Assembly (NCBI GenBank): GCA_001179505.1
Contig: CDMY01000104.1
Coordinates: forward strand, 1 to 64,000
DNA from: Vitrella brassicaformis CCMP3155
Taxonomy: Eukaryota > Protista > Chromerida
Direction of reading: 5' to 3'
DNA: 64,000 nucleotides
Position 1 is the first letter of the stretch. Every line of letters begins with the position of its first letter. Under the pieces are notes generated by a model. The model was not told the origin of the DNA, made no database searches, and worked only from the letters and a program-made list of their open reading frames with translations. The translations under genes were made by a program, and so were the position numbers. Positions 12,337 through 26,687 of this stretch are shown one piece after another.

Positions 12337-14100
12337 TCACGTCAGGCCCAGCGAGACGAACGCGTCGTCATCCATGTACCCCAGCTGCTGCCAATGAAAC
12401 TGGCAGTCGGCGTCGCCGAGGTGGGTGTTGAAGTCCTTCTCCACACCAGTTACGCCGTGTCGGTCCGCCTCATCCAACCGTGCCCTGTGGACCACTTCGC
12501 GCAGCCCCAGCAGCCGGTGCTGCCCATCGTGCTGCCGCCTCACGGCGAAACACTGCAGCGGCACTCTGACCGTCCTGCCGCCCACATTGGCCACCACGCC
12601 CACCACCTCCTGATTGCTGTTGGCCCTCAGTGCGGAACGAACGAAATGCTCCGCTGCCGCATGCACACGATCCGCCATGTCGGTGTGCCGCAAGCCGATG
12701 CCCTCTCTGATAGCCCTCATGGCGTTGTCCATGTCGAAGAGGTATGATGCAATACGCCAGGCAAAGACATCCAATGGGCGGACGGCGAGCAAAGGGGTGA
12801 GCAAGGCAGCGAGTGACCGTTGGGGGCCGAGGGCCCGGTTGACAGCTGCCATGGTCACATTCCGTAGCTCGTTGAGCACCGCAGTGTACTCGGTCAGAAT
12901 CAGCTGCCGCTTGTGGCGCTCAACGAGGCTGGCTGTAGGCATTAGGCTGATGTCGGCGCCCGCTTTCAGTAATGAATGGATAGTCGTCTTGATCATGGAA
13001 CTTCGCTGATCATCCTCTAGATGCAAGTTGGCTGCCTGGAGTTGCTGGGACCGTTGGACGAGCGCGTCGGCAGCACAGACGAGGGGTGGGTCAGCAAAGA
13101 TGGGCGTACCGTTGATGCTGCCGGTCTGTGCTCGACTGTTGATCTCGGCAGCGGGCAGCTTGCGACACAGGTAGTCGGCCACAATGGGAGAGCCAAACTC
13201 GATCGCCCGGTCTAGTGGCTTTTGCCGGAGTTGGTCATATGCTGCGATATCGGCGCCGTGCTGGGTGATGAGGTCAAGGTAGCTGTTGATAAAGGACGAT
13301 GCACAGTGCCCCTGTGCGTACTGGGCTGCCATGTGCACTAAGTTGCCCAACATGCTATCCCCGTCTTGTTCGGTTGCGAGTGTGGCGTCATAATGGACGA
13401 GGGTGCGATACATGCTCAGCAGAACCTCCTGATACTCGGGGAGAAGGGGACGCAGCATACGAGGCAGCTCCAACACAACGAACATGTCGACCCGGATGCT
13501 ACTCTGTCGCATCAGCAGCTCGAATGCCGGCTGGTTGATCGATGCGATGGCCACTCGGAGGGGCCTCCGCCGAAAAGTGTGTGGCCATTCGGATGGGATA
13601 TCCGGATGTTGATAGCGCGGGATGCCCCAAGATAAACGGCTGCCTCCCGTCAGATCCGCCCCTCCGTCGATTACTGCGGTGATCATGCCTTCCTCCAGAC
13701 CGTCGGGCCACAGCGGCAAAGCGACGGGACAGCCACGGTAGTTATCATGGGTTTGTGCCTGGACGGTCGGGATAGTGTGGTCTGACTTGTTGTCGATCAC
13801 GAGAGACAGCAACGGGTATATGATGCCCTCTGTGCTGCTGGTGCTGCTGCCCTTCTTCCGCAGCCGAATCATGACACAAGGGTCGGCGCCCTCCTGCTCG
13901 TGGCGGATGAGGTCGGTTGCTTCCTGGACGTCGGTGATGGTGCGACTAATGAGGCCCACGGCTAGCTGCTTAGTGGCGTCGTTGGTGCCCTCGGGGAATC
14001 GAGCCTCAATGTCGTCAGCTCCCAGCCAGCCCTCAGGCACAGCAACTGCAGTGGCCGAGGGAGGAATCGCCACGCCTGCAGCGCAGGGCCCACACACCAT
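12337..14100 (-). CDS. Intronless ankyrin-like repeat protein of a lineage-expanded family
   Basis: 633-aa ORF (likely ATG 14100) with ankyrin-like segments (KPLDRAIEFGSPIVADYLCRK, SLLKAGADIS). C-terminus matches the paralog at 35742. Confidence 0.75.
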   Translation of the reverse strand: MVCGPCAAGVAIPPSATAVAVPEGWLGADDIEARFPEGTNDATKQLAVGLISRTITDVQEATDLIRHEQEGADPCVMIRLRKKGSSTSSTEGIIYPLLSLVIDNKSDHTIPTVQAQTHDNYRGCPVALPLWPDGLEEGMITAVIDGGADLTGGSRLSWGIPRYQHPDIPSEWPHTFRRRPLRVAIASINQPAFELLMRQSSIRVDMFVVLELPRMLRPLLPEYQEVLLSMYRTLVHYDATLATEQDGDSMLGNLVHMAAQYAQGHCASSFINSYLDLITQHGADIAAYDQLRQKPLDRAIEFGSPIVADYLCRKLPAAEINSRAQTGSINGTPIFADPPLVCAADALVQRSQQLQAANLHLEDDQRSSMIKTTIHSLLKAGADISLMPTASLVERHKRQLILTEYTAVLNELRNVTMAAVNRALGPQRSLAALLTPLLAVRPLDVFAWRIASYLFDMDNAMRAIREGIGLRHTDMADRVHAAAEHFVRSALRANSNQEVVGVVANVGGRTVRVPLQCFAVRRQHDGQHRLLGLREVVHRARLDEADRHGVTGVEKDFNTHLGDADCQFHWQQLGYMDDDAFVSLGLT

Positions 14101-14321
14101 GTGACGCACATAGCGGATCCGCGTGTGTGTCCGGCGTACCGTGCTCCTCATATTCGGGCGTCCAGGCGAGATGTTCGTCGTACCAGTCACTCTGCGACAT
14201 ACGGTACTCCGCCCAGTCAGCCCGAGACCAGCAATCACTGATATCGGAGTCCTGCGTACGAGAGCAATGAGGAGGGCAGAAACGAGATGTAATCACATGG
14301 AATCGATGGTAAGTTGACGAA

Positions 14322-21347: not shown

Positions 21348-21765
21348 TATCGGTTGACGCTTTTCATGTGGTCCATGGATGGAAGGGGGTGTGTGTGTGT
21401 GTGTGTGGCTGCAGTGCCGCCGGTGGCGGTGGGCTCCCCTGGCCGGAGAGAGCGGGACAGACACAGACGAGGGTGAAACAAATTGGCGTGTTGAATGGCG
21501 TGGATCGGATGGCGTGTGTATGCTCTGCTCTGCTCTGCTCTGGTGTTTCTTGGCTGACCAATTGGTTCGGGCACAGACGGAGAGATCGCATTGATTGCAT
21601 TCCATATGATTATTAATAATCGGGAAGGACGGGAGTGTCTCAAATGCTATCTATGTGTGTCCGCTGTAAGTGGCACCTACGATAACGACCAATCTGTACA
21701 TCTCGTGGCGCGCGAGAGAAATAAAGGGAATATGCTCACACCCACACCCACACCCAGGATGATCA

Positions 21766-24700
21766 TCATGACAGAGGAAACCGCTGGACACACACACACA
21801 CGGAGAGAGAGAGAGAGAGAGAGAGAGATGCAGAGATCCGTGTTGTGTCTATGTGTGTGTGTACCTTCAAGAGTTTGCCGGGTTTGCCGCGGACATGAAC
21901 CACCGGACTGCGGTCCTCCCTCTGCACACACACACACACACCAACGAGTGCCCCCGTATGTGTCGGCCTAGCCACACACACACACACACACACACGTACC
22001 CGATCGCCGCGCTCTCGGTCGGAGGCCGTGCTCCTGTGATTCACGTGACTCTACCACACACACACACACACACGCACACACACAGATGCACCGTTTTGCG
22101 CCCATCCGCCCCCTTCCCCACCTTTGCACGTACCTCGCTCGTTGCGCGTGTGGGCGGCTCGTCCACCATGGCGGGCACTTGGAGCGCACGAGGCACATGA
22201 CGATGGTGATGAGACGACACATCCCGCTGCTCCTCCGTGGGGTTTTCTGGGGCCTCCCCGCCGCCATCGCCATCGCCGTAGAGCTTCACCATGTCGATCC
22301 TGCACACACATACACACATGTCCGTCCGTCCATTGATCCACCCACCCCTGCCCTGTGTGTTTGTTGACCGTGCGATGTTTCTGCCAGGGACGAGGAACGA
22401 TGCCCTCGGGCACATCCTGACGGAGGGGTGCTTCGGCCGCCGCACATACGCTGGCGGCAATGTGATCCTGTAGATGCGCGACGAGTAGTACCGATTCTCC
22501 TGCACCATACACACACACACACACACATGGATGGATGCATGGATGGATGGATGGATGGGGCCATTTGTGCGCCGGGGTGTGTGGGAAGGCACGCCTGCCT
22601 TTTTCCTGTGGATGGACAGCATCTTCAGCAGCGGTTTCCTCTGCCATGCCACCAAAGCGGAGATGGGCGTGGTTGCTACACAAACACACACACAGAGACA
22701 CACACACACACATATGGCTGGATGGATGGATTGACGCGCACAGGAAGAGGCTGCCTTACCCTTTGTGTGCATGGTGTGCCGCATGAGGTCGGTGAACTGC
22801 GTGCGCACGTGGCCCATGTGGTCTGGCGCCACCCTTTCAACACACACACACACGTGTGATCCGCATACACACACAGATGGATGGCCAGGCATAGCTCACC
22901 ATGGTGATATCTTCTTCGCCTCGACGGCCTTCCTCGTCAAGAGCACATCATCGTCCAGCGAACAGTCAGACAGCGCCCTCTCCTACACCCACACACACAC
23001 ACACATACACACACACACAGAGACACTCCCATGTGTGTGTGTGCGCGTGGTGTGTGTGCGGACCTCCTCCTCCAGCTGCTGCTGCTGCTGGGCGTGGGTG
23101 TGTGTCCGCTGCATGACGGTGTCGGGGTGTGGCGGTGTGGGCACCCAGTAGGGGTCATCGTGCAGCTGATCTGCGTGTGTGTCGCCTGTACAGCACGAGG
23201 AGGGCTGCAGCAGCAGCGTGTTGGTGTTGGTGTTGGTTGTGGTGGCTGTGGCGGTGGGAGAGCACTCCTCCATCGGATGAGGCATCGGGTGGTGCATCGG
23301 TGGGACGGGGCCGTCTGTTCTCCGCTTCTTGGCCGGCCCCTGCTGCTGCTGTCCGTGACTCTGCCACACACGCACACACACACATGGATGGATGGATAGA
23401 TGGATGTCTCGGTCTGAGCGCGTACGTGTGTTGCAAGAGCTGCTGCTGCTGCTGGGGGTGGCGGTGGGGGTGGTGGGATTGGTGGCACAGCCACAGGGAC
23501 CGGTTTGGACATGTCCTGCATCTCGTGGCTGCACGCTCCCCCTCCCCCGCCCCCCTGCTCGATGTCCATCGAGGCTGATGACGGTGTTGCCGGCTGCTGC
23601 TGCTGTTGTTGTTGGGGTGGAGGAGGTTGCCGCATCTTCATGTAGGCCGCGAAGGTGGCTGCACGGGACGGATGCATGAGTGCATCAGCCAACACACCAA
23701 CATGGGTGCGTGTTGGGGCTGCGCGTGTGCCACCATGTGCTGACTGACCTTCTGGCAGCACCCTTCGAAGCACATCGTCCGGCACACAAGACAGGGCGCC
23801 CTCGGACACTACACACACACACACATTGGCCATCCATTCCTGTGTGTGTGTGTGCATGTCTGTGTGCGTCTCTGTCTCTCTCTATCTTACTTGGCCCATG
23901 TGCAAGTGCGTAGTGTGTCGTGTGTCCCGTGTGTGTGGGCAACAGTGGCGAAGGCTTCTTGCCCCGCGCCACTGCTGATGACAATGGGAGGGGTGGAGAG
24001 GGCGAGGGGGGCTTCCTGCACCCACATGTGGCCAAACACACACACCGGACGGATGTGTGTGTGTGTGTGTGTGTACCGTTTTGGAGCATGGCCGTGTTTC
24101 TTGTCTGTCTCCGGCAGCAGCGGCACGCTCTTGTCTCGGTCGCGCACCTAAATGCAGTCCATCCATCCATCCATCCATCCATGTGTGTGTAAGTTCAGGT
24201 GAGGACGGACAGGTACCTTTATGAGCACAGTCCGCCTTTTCGGCGAGTCGGCCGTCTCCTCTCCTTCGCTGCATACATGGATAGATGTGATCACACACAC
24301 ACACGCACACACACAAATGGGGAAGATGGCTTCTCACACACACATATGAAGTGCGCACACACCTGCTCAGAGGCGACACGAGAGCCTCTCTCTCCTCCGC
24401 TGCCACCAACCACCCCACACACAGACACAGACACAGAGATGTATGTGTGCACTCGTGAGGGGCGGGGGTTGCTGCAGTCAGTTATAAACTGACCCGATAG
24501 CCGGCCCTCGATCCTTATTGAGGTTATCGGCTGAGCTTGCCCCGCCCTGCCAACACACACACACACACACACATGGGGGTCCACCCCTCTTGGCTGGTGG
24601 TTGCACCATACCATGGTCATTCTTCATTTCATTCAGTGATACTAACCTGAACGTGTGGATGACTGGCCCGCCGGCTTCGTCGGCCAGCACCCGAACGAAG

Positions 24701-25928
24701 CCCTTCTTGGTCACCTCTATGCCTAAACACACACCACACCACACACAGACAGACGCCACACACACACACACACAGACACAGACAAGAATGTGCGCGCACT
24801 GCAGGCGTGTTGGTGAGTGCAGTGCAGTGCTCTGCAGTGCACATGGCTGACCTTCCATCCAGGTGAGCATAGAGGGGATGATCCACACCAGGCAGCCTGC
24901 ACAGATCGATGGATGGATTATGTGTGTGGTGTGGTGTGGGTGGATGTGACACATGTGCAGCCACCGCACCGGCCGTGATGAGCGAGACCACACACGTGAC
25001 ACCCCTTCACACAGACACACACACACACACACACATATGGACACACACACATCCCCTCCCCGCACAGACATAGTACATTGCACAAAGGTGTGTGGGCCCG
25101 CACTGACTTGAGGAAGGACAGCAAGCCCATCGCGTGTGTCAAATGGGCATCGGTCAGCGCTGAACACACACACCACACATCACCCCCTCCATGAGTGTGA
25201 GTCAGTGTGTGTGTGTGTGTGTGGACGCACCGGTCATGAAGTGGGTCGTTCCGCAGAAGACTTCACACACACACAGACACACACACCCGTGCAGAGAGGG
25301 AGAGAGATAGCCCACCCTGTGGGTGTGGAGGCGTGGCCATGAAGCTCACATATAAACAGCATGAATGTGACGCCCAGCGTCAGCACCTCAACCTGGTCCT
25401 TGGCCGTCAACACCTACGCACGAGAGAGAGAGAGGGAGAGGGAGAAGGAGAGAGGTCAGTCAGTGCATCCGTCTGTGTGTGGTGTGTGTGTGTGCATGTG
25501 TCTGTGTGCCTGGTCGGCGAGCAGCTTCGAGAAGGGGTTGAACTCCGTCGCCATGCGGTACCTTTATCCATCCATCCACACACACTCGTCAGTCAATCCA
25601 TCCATGTGTGTGCGCACACACAGTCAGACACACACCCACATACACACACAGACGCACAGACGCACACACGTCAGGTAGGTAGGGTACCTGACGACGAAGA
25701 AGAAGATCTGAATGGGTATACTGACATAGGCAAAGCTCGTCAACAGGTCAAAGCCTGGCAAGGCAAGTCAACCACACACACACACACACACACACATGCA
25801 ATGAATGAATGAGTGCCCGACAAACAAACACAACACCCTTGTCTGTGTGTGTGTGTGTGTGTGACTGTGTGTCGGTAACCGTACTTACCGATTGTGAGGT
25901 GGAAGAGGTGTGGGCTGATCTGCTCCAT
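21766..25928 (-). CDS. Protein with an N-terminal ETR1-type ethylene-binding TM domain and a long non-kinase cytoplasmic tail, >20 small exons
   Basis: Exons 25928-25889, 25754-25688, 25561-25510, 25413-25350, 25260-25231, 25159-25108, 25004-24970 and 24896-24852 splice in phase to MEQISPHLFHLTIGFDLLTSFAYVSIPIQIFFFVVRYRMATEFNPFSKLLADQVLTAKDQVEVLTLGVTFMLFIFFCGTTHFMTALTDAHLTHAMGLLSFLKGVTCVVSLITAGCLVWIIPSMLTWMEG. Downstream exons continue in compatible phase to ~21766. Confidence 0.8.
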
Positions 25929-25977
25929 CAGACTCTGAGGCGATTGCGGCCTGAAGAGATGTCACAAACACTGTCCG

Positions 25978-26118
25978 CCTGTCTGTCTGTCTGTCTGTCT
26001 GTCTGTGCATCTGTCTGTCTGTCTGTCTGTGTGTCTGTCTGTCTGTGCATCTGTCTGTCTGTCTGTCTGTGTGTCTGTCTGTCTGTCTGTCTGTGTGTCT
26101 GTCTGTGCATCTGTGTGT
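25978..26118. repeat. Compound (TGTC/TCTG)n microsatellite in a 5' intron
   Basis: ~140 bp of tgtc/tctg units. Confidence 0.9.
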
Positions 26119-26411
26119 GACTTACCCGCCATCTCCCCCAAGAGTCAGAGTGCTCAGCCCTTCAGCAGCAGCAGTAGCTGATGCTGCAGCCATCTGACGC
26201 AGACTCATCATCACCATGATCACAATCACCAGCACGCACTTTGTCAACTGATAGCAAGATGCCACGAGGTGCGATGCCTTCCGACGCCGCCGAACGGCAT
26301 CTTATTTTCTCATCTCAATGAGTTTTTTTGCCCAAGGAACCTGCGAGCTTAGAGATGTTGCGAGCTGCGGGAAAGAGCTGCGGGAAAGTGGTCACTCGAC
26401 TGCAAACTACG

Positions 26412-26687
26412 ATGGCGAAGCCCTCTCACGTGCGGTTCAATGTGGGCGGGAAGGAGTTCTCCACCAGCAGGTCTGAGTCGGAGCGAGGAACGCAATCTTG
26501 CAGATCTTTTAGTGCATGCGATGCGATGCATGCGACGATAAAGATCTCTTTGTGTGTGTGCAGGACGACCATCAAGAAGTTCCCGAACTGTTTGCTCTCA
26601 AGGGTGGGGTAGAGAGGCAGGGCAGGGAGGACCGGACAGACATGCATGTGCTGTAGTGAGTGCTGTGTGGATGTCTGGATGGCATTG

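What the first reader, a model, noticed from the sequence alone, without database searches (positions are those of the whole stretch)
24852..25928. ETR1-type ethylene-binding domain hidden in eight micro-exons of an alveolate gene
Seen in sequence: eight exons of 30-67 nt, which the ORF track misses, splice in perfect phase (one GC donor at 25509) to FDLLTSFAYVSIPIQIFFFV...FMLFIFFCGTTHFM...KGVTCVVSLITAGCLVWIIP. Established: the Arabidopsis ETR1 sensor reads DFFIAIAYFSIPLELIYFV...FGAFIVLCGATHLI...KVLTAVVSCATALMLVHIIP. The residues needed for Cu(I)/ethylene binding (D25, Y32, I35/P36, I62, C65, H69) all have counterparts here. A ~18-aa insertion sits in the TM1-TM2 loop. Inference: a copper-dependent ethylene/alkene sensor in a chromerid-like alga.
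Basis: partly seen in the sequence, partly recalled or inferred. Interest (0 to 1): 0.9.

Follow-up and report, generated by a model that had tools for sequence, protein, structure and literature searches.

The report
Annotated ethylene-binding domain gene in Vitrella
The tiny exons do splice into a genuine plant-type copper/ethylene-binding membrane domain in the alga Vitrella brassicaformis, but public databases already hold this exact gene model and name the domain, and reviews already list chromerids among organisms with putative ethylene receptors.

Summary
Eight minus-strand exons (40, 67, 52, 64, 30, 52, 35 and 45 nt) all have AG acceptors. Seven donors are GT and one is GC, at 25509. 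They join in frame to a 128-aa peptide with three hydrophobic helices. That peptide scores 60 bits (E 2.4e-16, cut-off 27) against Pfam PF25487 ETR1_N. It keeps the Asp, Tyr, Ile-Pro, Ile, Cys, His and Lys positions that define the Cu(I)/ethylene site.

It is not hidden. A 26-exon CDS read from the window (26193..21766) translates exactly to CEL92723.1 / A0A0G4EBQ1 of Vitrella brassicaformis CCMP3155. UniRef names that protein [quoted passage not shown]. A transcript contig confirms nine junctions in the 3' half, including a second GC-AG intron. I could not check the junctions of the eight exons themselves with reads.

Two papers already list Chromerida among lineages with putative ethylene receptors, none of them tested functionally. 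This scan has also already reported a paralogous domain on another piece of the same genome.

The one unusual feature is the 554-aa tail. It has no GAF, kinase or receiver domain and is predicted to be mostly disordered.

The parts
21766..26193 (-). Whole coding region of the gene: 26 exons, 2136 nt, 711 aa plus stop. Identical to CEL92723.1 / UniRef100_A0A0G4EBQ1.
   Evidence: The CDS assembled from window exons translates exactly to P0003.
26126..26193 (-). Exon 1 (coding part, aa 1-22).
25889..25950 (-). Exon 2 (62 nt, aa 23-43).
25688..25754 (-). Exon 3 (67 nt, aa 44-65). Encodes TM1 with D46, Y53, I56 and P57.
   Evidence: This exon alone hits PF25487 at 20.3 bits. Conserved columns are shown.
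25510..25561 (-). Exon 4 (52 nt). Encodes the first part of the 21-aa loop insertion and is followed by the GC donor at 25509-25508.
25350..25413 (-). Exon 5 (64 nt). Encodes the rest of the loop and the first half of TM2, including F100, F103 and I104.
25231..25260 (-). Exon 6 (30 nt). Encodes the second half of TM2 with the Cu(I) ligands C107 and H111 (C-G-T-T-H).
25108..25159 (-). Exon 7 (52 nt). Encodes the TM2-TM3 loop and the start of TM3.
24970..25004 (-). Exon 8 (35 nt). Encodes TM3 with K132, T135, S139, T142 and A143.
24852..24896 (-). Exon 9 (45 nt). Encodes the end of TM3 with P151 and is the last exon of the domain.
21766..24722 (-). Exons 10-26 encode a 554-aa Pro-rich tail (aa 158-711) with no recognised domain. 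A second GC donor lies at 22598-22597.
   Evidence: Pfam finds only ETR1_N and NCBIfam finds nothing. Atlas feature scores are about 0.5. AF2 pLDDT is mostly under 50.
21630..23475 (-). Span covered by the spliced transcript contig L001 (JGI 3300017297, 1140 nt): the end of exon 17 through exon 26, plus 3' UTR.
   Evidence: blastn of L001 against the window gives 9 exon-exon junctions, with blocks at 98-100% identity.

Best explanation
Shown: the finding is the 5' third of the nuclear gene of Vitrella brassicaformis that encodes CEL92723.1 (711 aa, 26 exons). Exons 2-9 encode a three-helix membrane domain that belongs to the ETR1_N ethylene-binding-domain family. It has the TM2 Cys and His that hold Cu(I) in ETR1, the TM1 Asp and TM3 Lys that ETR1 work links to high-affinity binding and signal relay, and the other TM1/TM2 residues reported as needed for binding. 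Inferred (about 0.6): the domain binds Cu(I) and, through it, ethylene or a similar small alkene. Inferred more weakly: because no GAF, histidine-kinase or receiver domain follows, a ligand-driven shift of TM3 would have to be read out by the largely disordered, Pro/Gln-rich cytosolic tail through partner binding or tail release, not by phosphotransfer.
For: The exon chain and its phases were read directly. The translation is exactly identical to P0003. Pfam PF25487 scores 60.2 bits on the joined peptide and 53 bits on the full protein over residues 38-155, profile positions 2-96 of 97. An HMM built here from 118 bacterial domains scores 51.2 bits. In the 37-row subset alignment (the Vitrella domain plus 36 bacterial domains), all 37 are PF25487 members. 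Columns that my search pattern did not force are also shared: D in 98% of the bacterial sequences, F-x-x-F-I in 98-100%, K in 90%, T 99%, S 100%, T 97% and P 97%. Three hydrophobic segments are found. An AF2 model with that alignment gives long helices at pLDDT 76. Atlas feature neighbours are ETR1_N clusters at 0.89 with 185 shared features. Expression of the gene's 3' half is shown by transcript contig L001. Runs X7 and X8 hold 0.96 of a long exon elsewhere but only 0.21-0.28 of this intron-rich stretch, as RNA would. The roles of Cys65, His69, Asp25 and Lys91 come from PMC10266040. The statement that seven residues are required comes from PMC6682694.
Against: No read-level check of the eight junctions was possible. 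[quoted passage not shown] The N-terminal Cys found in all the bacterial comparators, and reported in plant receptors, is absent. So is the W-x-P-x-Y loop motif of the bacterial ones, and the TM1-TM2 loop carries a 21-aa insertion. Foldseek did not recover ethylene receptors significantly. No output domain is recognisable, so the signalling step is conjecture.
Confidence: 0.8

Rival explanations
1. The domain keeps the copper site but serves another purpose. It could handle or sense copper, or bind a different small ligand, with no role in ethylene signalling.
For: There is no kinase or other known transducer. Both loops and the N-terminus diverge from bacterial domains. Identity to bacterial domains is only 22-34%.
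Against: All residues reported as needed for ethylene binding are retained together, including the Asp-Lys pair tied to high affinity and signal relay. That pattern is what purifying selection for the same chemistry would give.
Confidence: 0.15
2. The three-helix domain acts as a cation-permeable channel, as reported for rice OsERS1/2, independently of ethylene binding.
For: PMC13261662 reports channel activity of rice receptors that does not need Cys65. A kinase-less protein could use such an activity.
Against: In that paper the activity depends on Cys4 and Cys6, the assembly sites. The Vitrella protein has no Cys before TM1.
Confidence: 0.03
3. The gene is a decaying relic, or a partly wrong model whose domain is no longer made.
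For: The tail is low-complexity and predicted to be disordered. No transcript contig covering exons 1-16 was found.
Against: The frame is intact over 26 exons, each with a consensus acceptor (the first coding exon begins at its ATG) and donor. All conserved domain residues are kept. The 3' half is transcribed and correctly spliced.
Confidence: 0.02

Closest known systems
Arabidopsis ETR1/ERS1-type ethylene receptors (rice ERS2 and Arabidopsis EIN4 were the plant hits seen here)
   Same: Both have a three-helix N-terminal domain of Pfam ETR1_N. Both carry the TM2 C-x-x-x-H copper site, the TM1 Asp and the TM3 Lys. Foldseek rows give 23-28% identity.
   Different: The Vitrella protein has no N-terminal Cys pair and no GAF, HisKA/HATPase or receiver domain. 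It has a 21-aa insertion between TM1 and TM2 and a 554-aa tail predicted to be disordered.
Cyanobacterial and other bacterial ethylene-binding-domain proteins (SynEtr1/slr1212 type; 118 fetched here)
   Same: They share the same Pfam family and the same conserved columns in all three helices, at 22-34% identity.
   Different: The bacterial proteins have an invariant Cys and a near-invariant Trp before TM1, an R-x-D loop motif and a W-x-P-x-Y loop motif, all absent here. SynEtr1 and the Geitlerinema proteins continue into PAS/GAF and kinase domains (PMC6682694).
Second Vitrella ethylene-binding-domain gene on another piece of this genome (scan note s1-252815)
   Same: An earlier agent reported it as a kinase-less protein with an annotated ETR1-type domain in the same species.
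   Different: It is a different locus with four exons for the domain instead of eight or nine. I did not see its sequence, so the degree of relatedness is unknown.
Small stand-alone ETR1_N proteins of bacteria and phages (ESM Atlas clusters of 107-130 aa)
   Same: They are the nearest clusters by language-model features (0.88-0.89) and also lack any kinase.
   Different: They consist of the domain alone. The Vitrella protein adds a long eukaryotic low-complexity tail.

Membership tests
ETR1_N ethylene-binding domain (Pfam PF25487) | Profile score above the curated gathering cut-off (27 bits) | tested here: met
   The joined peptide scores 60.2 bits. The full protein scores 53 bits over profile positions 2-96 of 97. 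Residues 25-170 score 59.5 bits.
ETR1_N ethylene-binding domain (Pfam PF25487) | Three transmembrane helices | tested here: met
   Three hydropathy peaks are found. The AF2 model with an alignment has helices at model residues 12-49, 63-93 and 101-135, plus a short extra helix in the loop.
ETR1_N ethylene-binding domain (Pfam PF25487) | Cu(I) ligands Cys65 and His69 of ETR1 in TM2 (C-x-x-x-H) | tested here: met
   C107 and H111 sit in the invariant columns. Their role is taken from PMC10266040.
ETR1_N ethylene-binding domain (Pfam PF25487) | TM1 Asp (ETR1 Asp25) and TM3 Lys (ETR1 Lys91) polar pair | tested here: met
   D46 falls in a column that is 98% D, and K132 in a column that is 90% K. 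My search pattern did not force either column.
ETR1_N ethylene-binding domain (Pfam PF25487) | Other residues reported as required for binding (ETR1 Y32, I35, P36, I62; residue list from my memory of Wang et al. 2006, their number from PMC6682694) | tested here: met
   Y53, I56, P57 and I104 have the same spacing as in the family. The Y, I and P columns were fixed by my pattern in the comparators, so only the Vitrella side is informative for them.
ETR1_N ethylene-binding domain (Pfam PF25487) | Saturable, copper-dependent ethylene binding | not testable with these tools
   This needs a 14C-ethylene assay on expressed protein.
ETR/ERS-type two-component ethylene receptor | GAF domain after the membrane domain | tested here: not met
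   Pfam at E up to 1 finds only ETR1_N.
ETR/ERS-type two-component ethylene receptor | HisKA and HATPase_c kinase core, with or without a receiver | tested here: not met
   There is no Pfam or NCBIfam hit. The tail has pLDDT under 50 almost throughout.
ETR/ERS-type two-component ethylene receptor | N-terminal Cys residue(s) for a disulfide-linked dimer | tested here: not met
   No Cys is present in residues 1-45. The equivalent column is 100% Cys in the bacterial set.

The most novel reading that the evidence does not exclude
The protein is a working ethylene (or other alkene) receptor that signals without any kinase. Ligand binding in the membrane domain would control the fate of the long disordered tail, for example by partner binding or by cleavage and nuclear entry. 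The tail carries a basic K-K-R-R cluster and Gln/Pro-rich stretches. Such a route would recall plant EIN2 C-end release, but built into the receptor itself, in a coral-reef alga related to apicomplexans.
Probability: 0.12. Interest if true: 0.65.

Novelty: already known. Interest (0 to 1): 0.2.

Why it matters
If the domain binds ethylene, chromerids would join cyanobacteria and plants as organisms that perceive this gas. That bears on how widely ethylene serves as a signal in marine microbial communities, and on what the domain did before plants coupled it to kinases. The sequence-level discovery itself is not new. The gene model, the domain name and the statement that Chromerida carry putative ethylene receptors are all public. 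What is still missing is experimental: binding, localisation and the output of a kinase-less tail.

Tried and rejected
I sent it to no other tool afterwards. It had already been scanned against Pfam.
- Three word-indexed protein searches found nothing. The 314-aa frame with exons 16-17 was swamped by low-complexity words and limited by the length window. The frame with exons 9-10 gave nothing. P0003 residues 30-160 gave nothing because its 90% cluster is represented by the 296-aa fragment and relatives are too distant for shared 5-mers.
- Two exact-match scans of JGI metagenome contigs, with exon 3 and with exon 10, found nothing.
- No solved structure is related by sequence. NCBIfam gave no hit.
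- Foldseek against AlphaFold Swiss-Prot and against the cluster representatives gave no significant match. Rice ERS2 and Arabidopsis EIN4 appear only at E 2.7-4.8. A simple helical bundle with an extra loop helix is a poor Foldseek query, so I treat this as uninformative.
- Ranking the bacterial domains by similarity mixed cyanobacteria and proteobacteria, so nothing can be said about origin.
- An F-box reading of the motif A-L-S-C-V-P-D-D-V-L has no Pfam support at E up to 1.
- Papon and Binder 2019 and Wang et al. 2006 are not held in the library.

Full report
**What is in the sequence**

The region is a minus-strand gene built from very short exons separated by introns of 61-175 nt rich in CA/TG microsatellite. 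Each is preceded by AG. Seven are followed by GT and one by GC, at 25509-25508. The joined 385 nt are open and give the quoted peptide. Hydropathy shows three membrane-length segments.

**Is it an ethylene-binding domain?**

- The open frame around the 67-nt exon alone hits Pfam PF25487 (ETR1_N) at 20.3 bits, E 6.8e-4, on profile positions 9-41.
- The joined 128-aa peptide scores 60.2 bits, E 2.4e-16, against a cut-off of 27. It matches in two stretches that together cover nearly the whole profile and are split by a loop insertion.
- As an independent test I fetched bacterial genes with a degenerate DNA pattern for the TM1 and TM2 motifs and extracted 118 distinct domains. All 37 sequences in the subset alignment (the Vitrella domain plus 36 bacterial ones) are PF25487 members.
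- An HMM built from those 118 scores the Vitrella protein at 51.2 bits. Its second alignment block runs from TM2 to the end of TM3, across four exon junctions, with a single two-residue insertion. Misplaced junctions would not give that.

Column by column, the protein matches the family at D46, A52, Y53, I56, P57, F100, F103, I104, C107, G108, T110, H111, K132, T135, S139, T142, A143 and P151. The A-Y..I-P and C-G.T-H columns were fixed in the comparators by my pattern. The Asp (98%), F-x-x-F-I (98-100%), Lys (90%) and the TM3 Thr/Ser/Thr/Pro columns (97-100%) were not.

PMC10266040 assigns Cys65 and His69 of ETR1 to Cu(I) binding, Asp25 to copper and high-affinity ethylene binding, and Lys91 to a polar bridge with Asp25. 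PMC6682694 states that seven residues are required for binding. The identity of those seven (D25, Y32, I35, P36, I62, C65, H69) is from my memory of Wang et al. 2006, which the library does not hold.

**How it differs from the family**

- The loop between TM1 and TM2 is 21 aa longer than in the bacterial set.
- The Cys and Trp that precede TM1 in the bacterial proteins are missing.
- The W-x-P-x-Y motif between TM2 and TM3 is missing.
- Identity to the bacterial domains is 22-34%.

**Is it hidden?**

No. I extended the model downstream by eye and script. Every further exon chained in frame with consensus sites down to a stop at 21766.

The 297-nt exon was the only long clean piece I could submit by reference. 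A search with it found a 296-aa protein, P0001, at 100% identity. P0001 is encoded on a 1140-nt JGI contig, L001. L001 aligns to the window as a spliced transcript in ten collinear blocks with nine junctions, running from the end of exon 17 to the 3' UTR at 21630. One of those junctions is a GC-AG intron at 22598.

The 90% cluster of P0001 has a second member, P0003. P0003 is CEL92723.1 / UniRef100_A0A0G4EBQ1, 711 aa, from Vitrella brassicaformis CCMP3155. UniRef names it [quoted passage not shown].

A 26-exon CDS taken from the window (26193..21766) translates exactly to P0003. It adds one coding exon upstream (26193-26126) and starts the next exon at 25950.

**Literature**

- Kabbara et al. 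(PMC6324907) surveyed histidine kinases only. They list seven for Vitrella and describe ethylene-receptor homologues within SAR only in a diatom. A kinase-less protein would have escaped that survey.
- Bidon et al. 2020 (PMC7700396) state that cytokinin and ethylene receptor homologues were identified in SAR clades including zooxanthellae and chromerids, with varied domain arrangements and no functional studies.
- PMC9603746 lists Chromerida among lineages with putative ethylene receptors.
- The primary source both cite, Papon and Binder 2019, is not held.
- This scan has also already followed up a second ethylene-binding-domain gene on another piece of this genome and reached the same conclusion: annotated, and kinase-less.

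**The rest of the protein**

- Pfam finds nothing but ETR1_N on the 711 aa at E up to 1, and NCBIfam finds nothing.
- Atlas feature neighbours of residues 158-711 score about 0.5, which is noise.
- The tail is 12.6% Pro and 63% disorder-favouring residues. It has Gln, Gly and Pro runs and a K-K-R-R cluster at 405.
- Single-sequence AF2 gives pLDDT under 50 almost everywhere after residue 157. The exception is a short helix pair at about 301-330 with pLDDT 76-85. That pair contains a motif repeated at residue 496.
- With the bacterial alignment, the domain itself models at pLDDT 76 as long helices, with an extra short helix in the inserted loop.
- Foldseek could not place the model significantly. 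I regard that as uninformative for a three-helix bundle.

**Mechanism**

What is shown is homology and retention of the whole ligand-site residue set. Cu(I)-dependent ethylene binding is an inference from that retention, which I rate at about 0.6. How a signal would leave the protein is unknown. There is no phosphotransfer module, so any output must go through the tail.

The channel activity reported for rice OsERS1/2 depends on Cys4 and Cys6, which this protein lacks. A dead gene is unlikely, because 26 exons keep frame, the conserved residues are kept, and the 3' half is transcribed and spliced.

**What could not be done**

The single read-laying run was lost to a filter on the repeat at 26029-26120. 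The junctions of exons 1-10 therefore rest on the profile alignment and on agreement with the public model, not on reads. Runs X7 and X8 behave like RNA libraries: they hold 0.96 of a long exon but only 0.21-0.28 of this stretch. That fits expression but says nothing about junctions.

**Verdict**

This is a real, correctly read feature and a correct family assignment. It was already annotated and already mentioned in reviews, so its novelty is low. The kinase-less tail is the only part that might repay work, and another note of this scan (s1-199381) covers it.

Noticed in passing
window 26029-26120: Intron 1 of the gene holds a long (CAGA)n-type tetranucleotide repeat with periodic variants. 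This is the stretch that made read laying refuse the whole call.
   Followed up: no
window 26200-26470: A plus-strand gene starts head-to-head about 200 nt from this gene's first coding exon. Its first exon reads like the start of a BTB/potassium-channel-tetramerisation-type domain (V-R-F-N-V-G-G-K-E-F). The two genes probably share a bidirectional promoter region.
   Followed up: no
window 23183-23218 (P0003 residues 462-473): The tail motif D-D-P-Y-W-V-P-T-P-P resembles a unit (D-D-P-Y-W-I-P-I-P-P-R) repeated five times in a 158-aa bacterial lipoprotein-like protein, P0002 (E 7.5e-5, 47% identity). It was the only other hit of exon 18 among 1.8 billion representatives.
   Followed up: no
P0003 residues 301-310 and 496-507 (window exons 16 and 19): A motif A-L-S-(x)-C-x-x-D-D-(D)-V-L occurs twice in the tail. 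The first copy lies in the only tail segment that AF2 models with pLDDT 76-85. No Pfam family, F-box included, matches it.
   Followed up: partly
ESM Atlas neighbours of P0003 30-160: The nearest clusters by features are 107-130-aa stand-alone ETR1_N proteins whose recorded members are largely phages (Uroviricota) and bacteria. Ethylene-binding domains therefore seem to circulate as single-domain phage genes.
   Followed up: no
window 22597-22598 and 25508-25509: Two of the 25 introns of this gene use GC donors. The one at 22598 is confirmed by a transcript contig, so GC-AG introns are in regular use in this genome.
   Followed up: yes
window 12337-14238 (minus): There is a 633-aa uninterrupted ORF, unusual in a genome of micro-exons. 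Runs that behave like RNA hold 96% of its words, and it has ankyrin-like stretches.
   Followed up: no
window 26194-26217: Three further in-frame ATG codons (M-V-M-M-S-L-R-Q) lie just upstream of the annotated start, so the real N-terminus may be eight residues longer.
   Followed up: no
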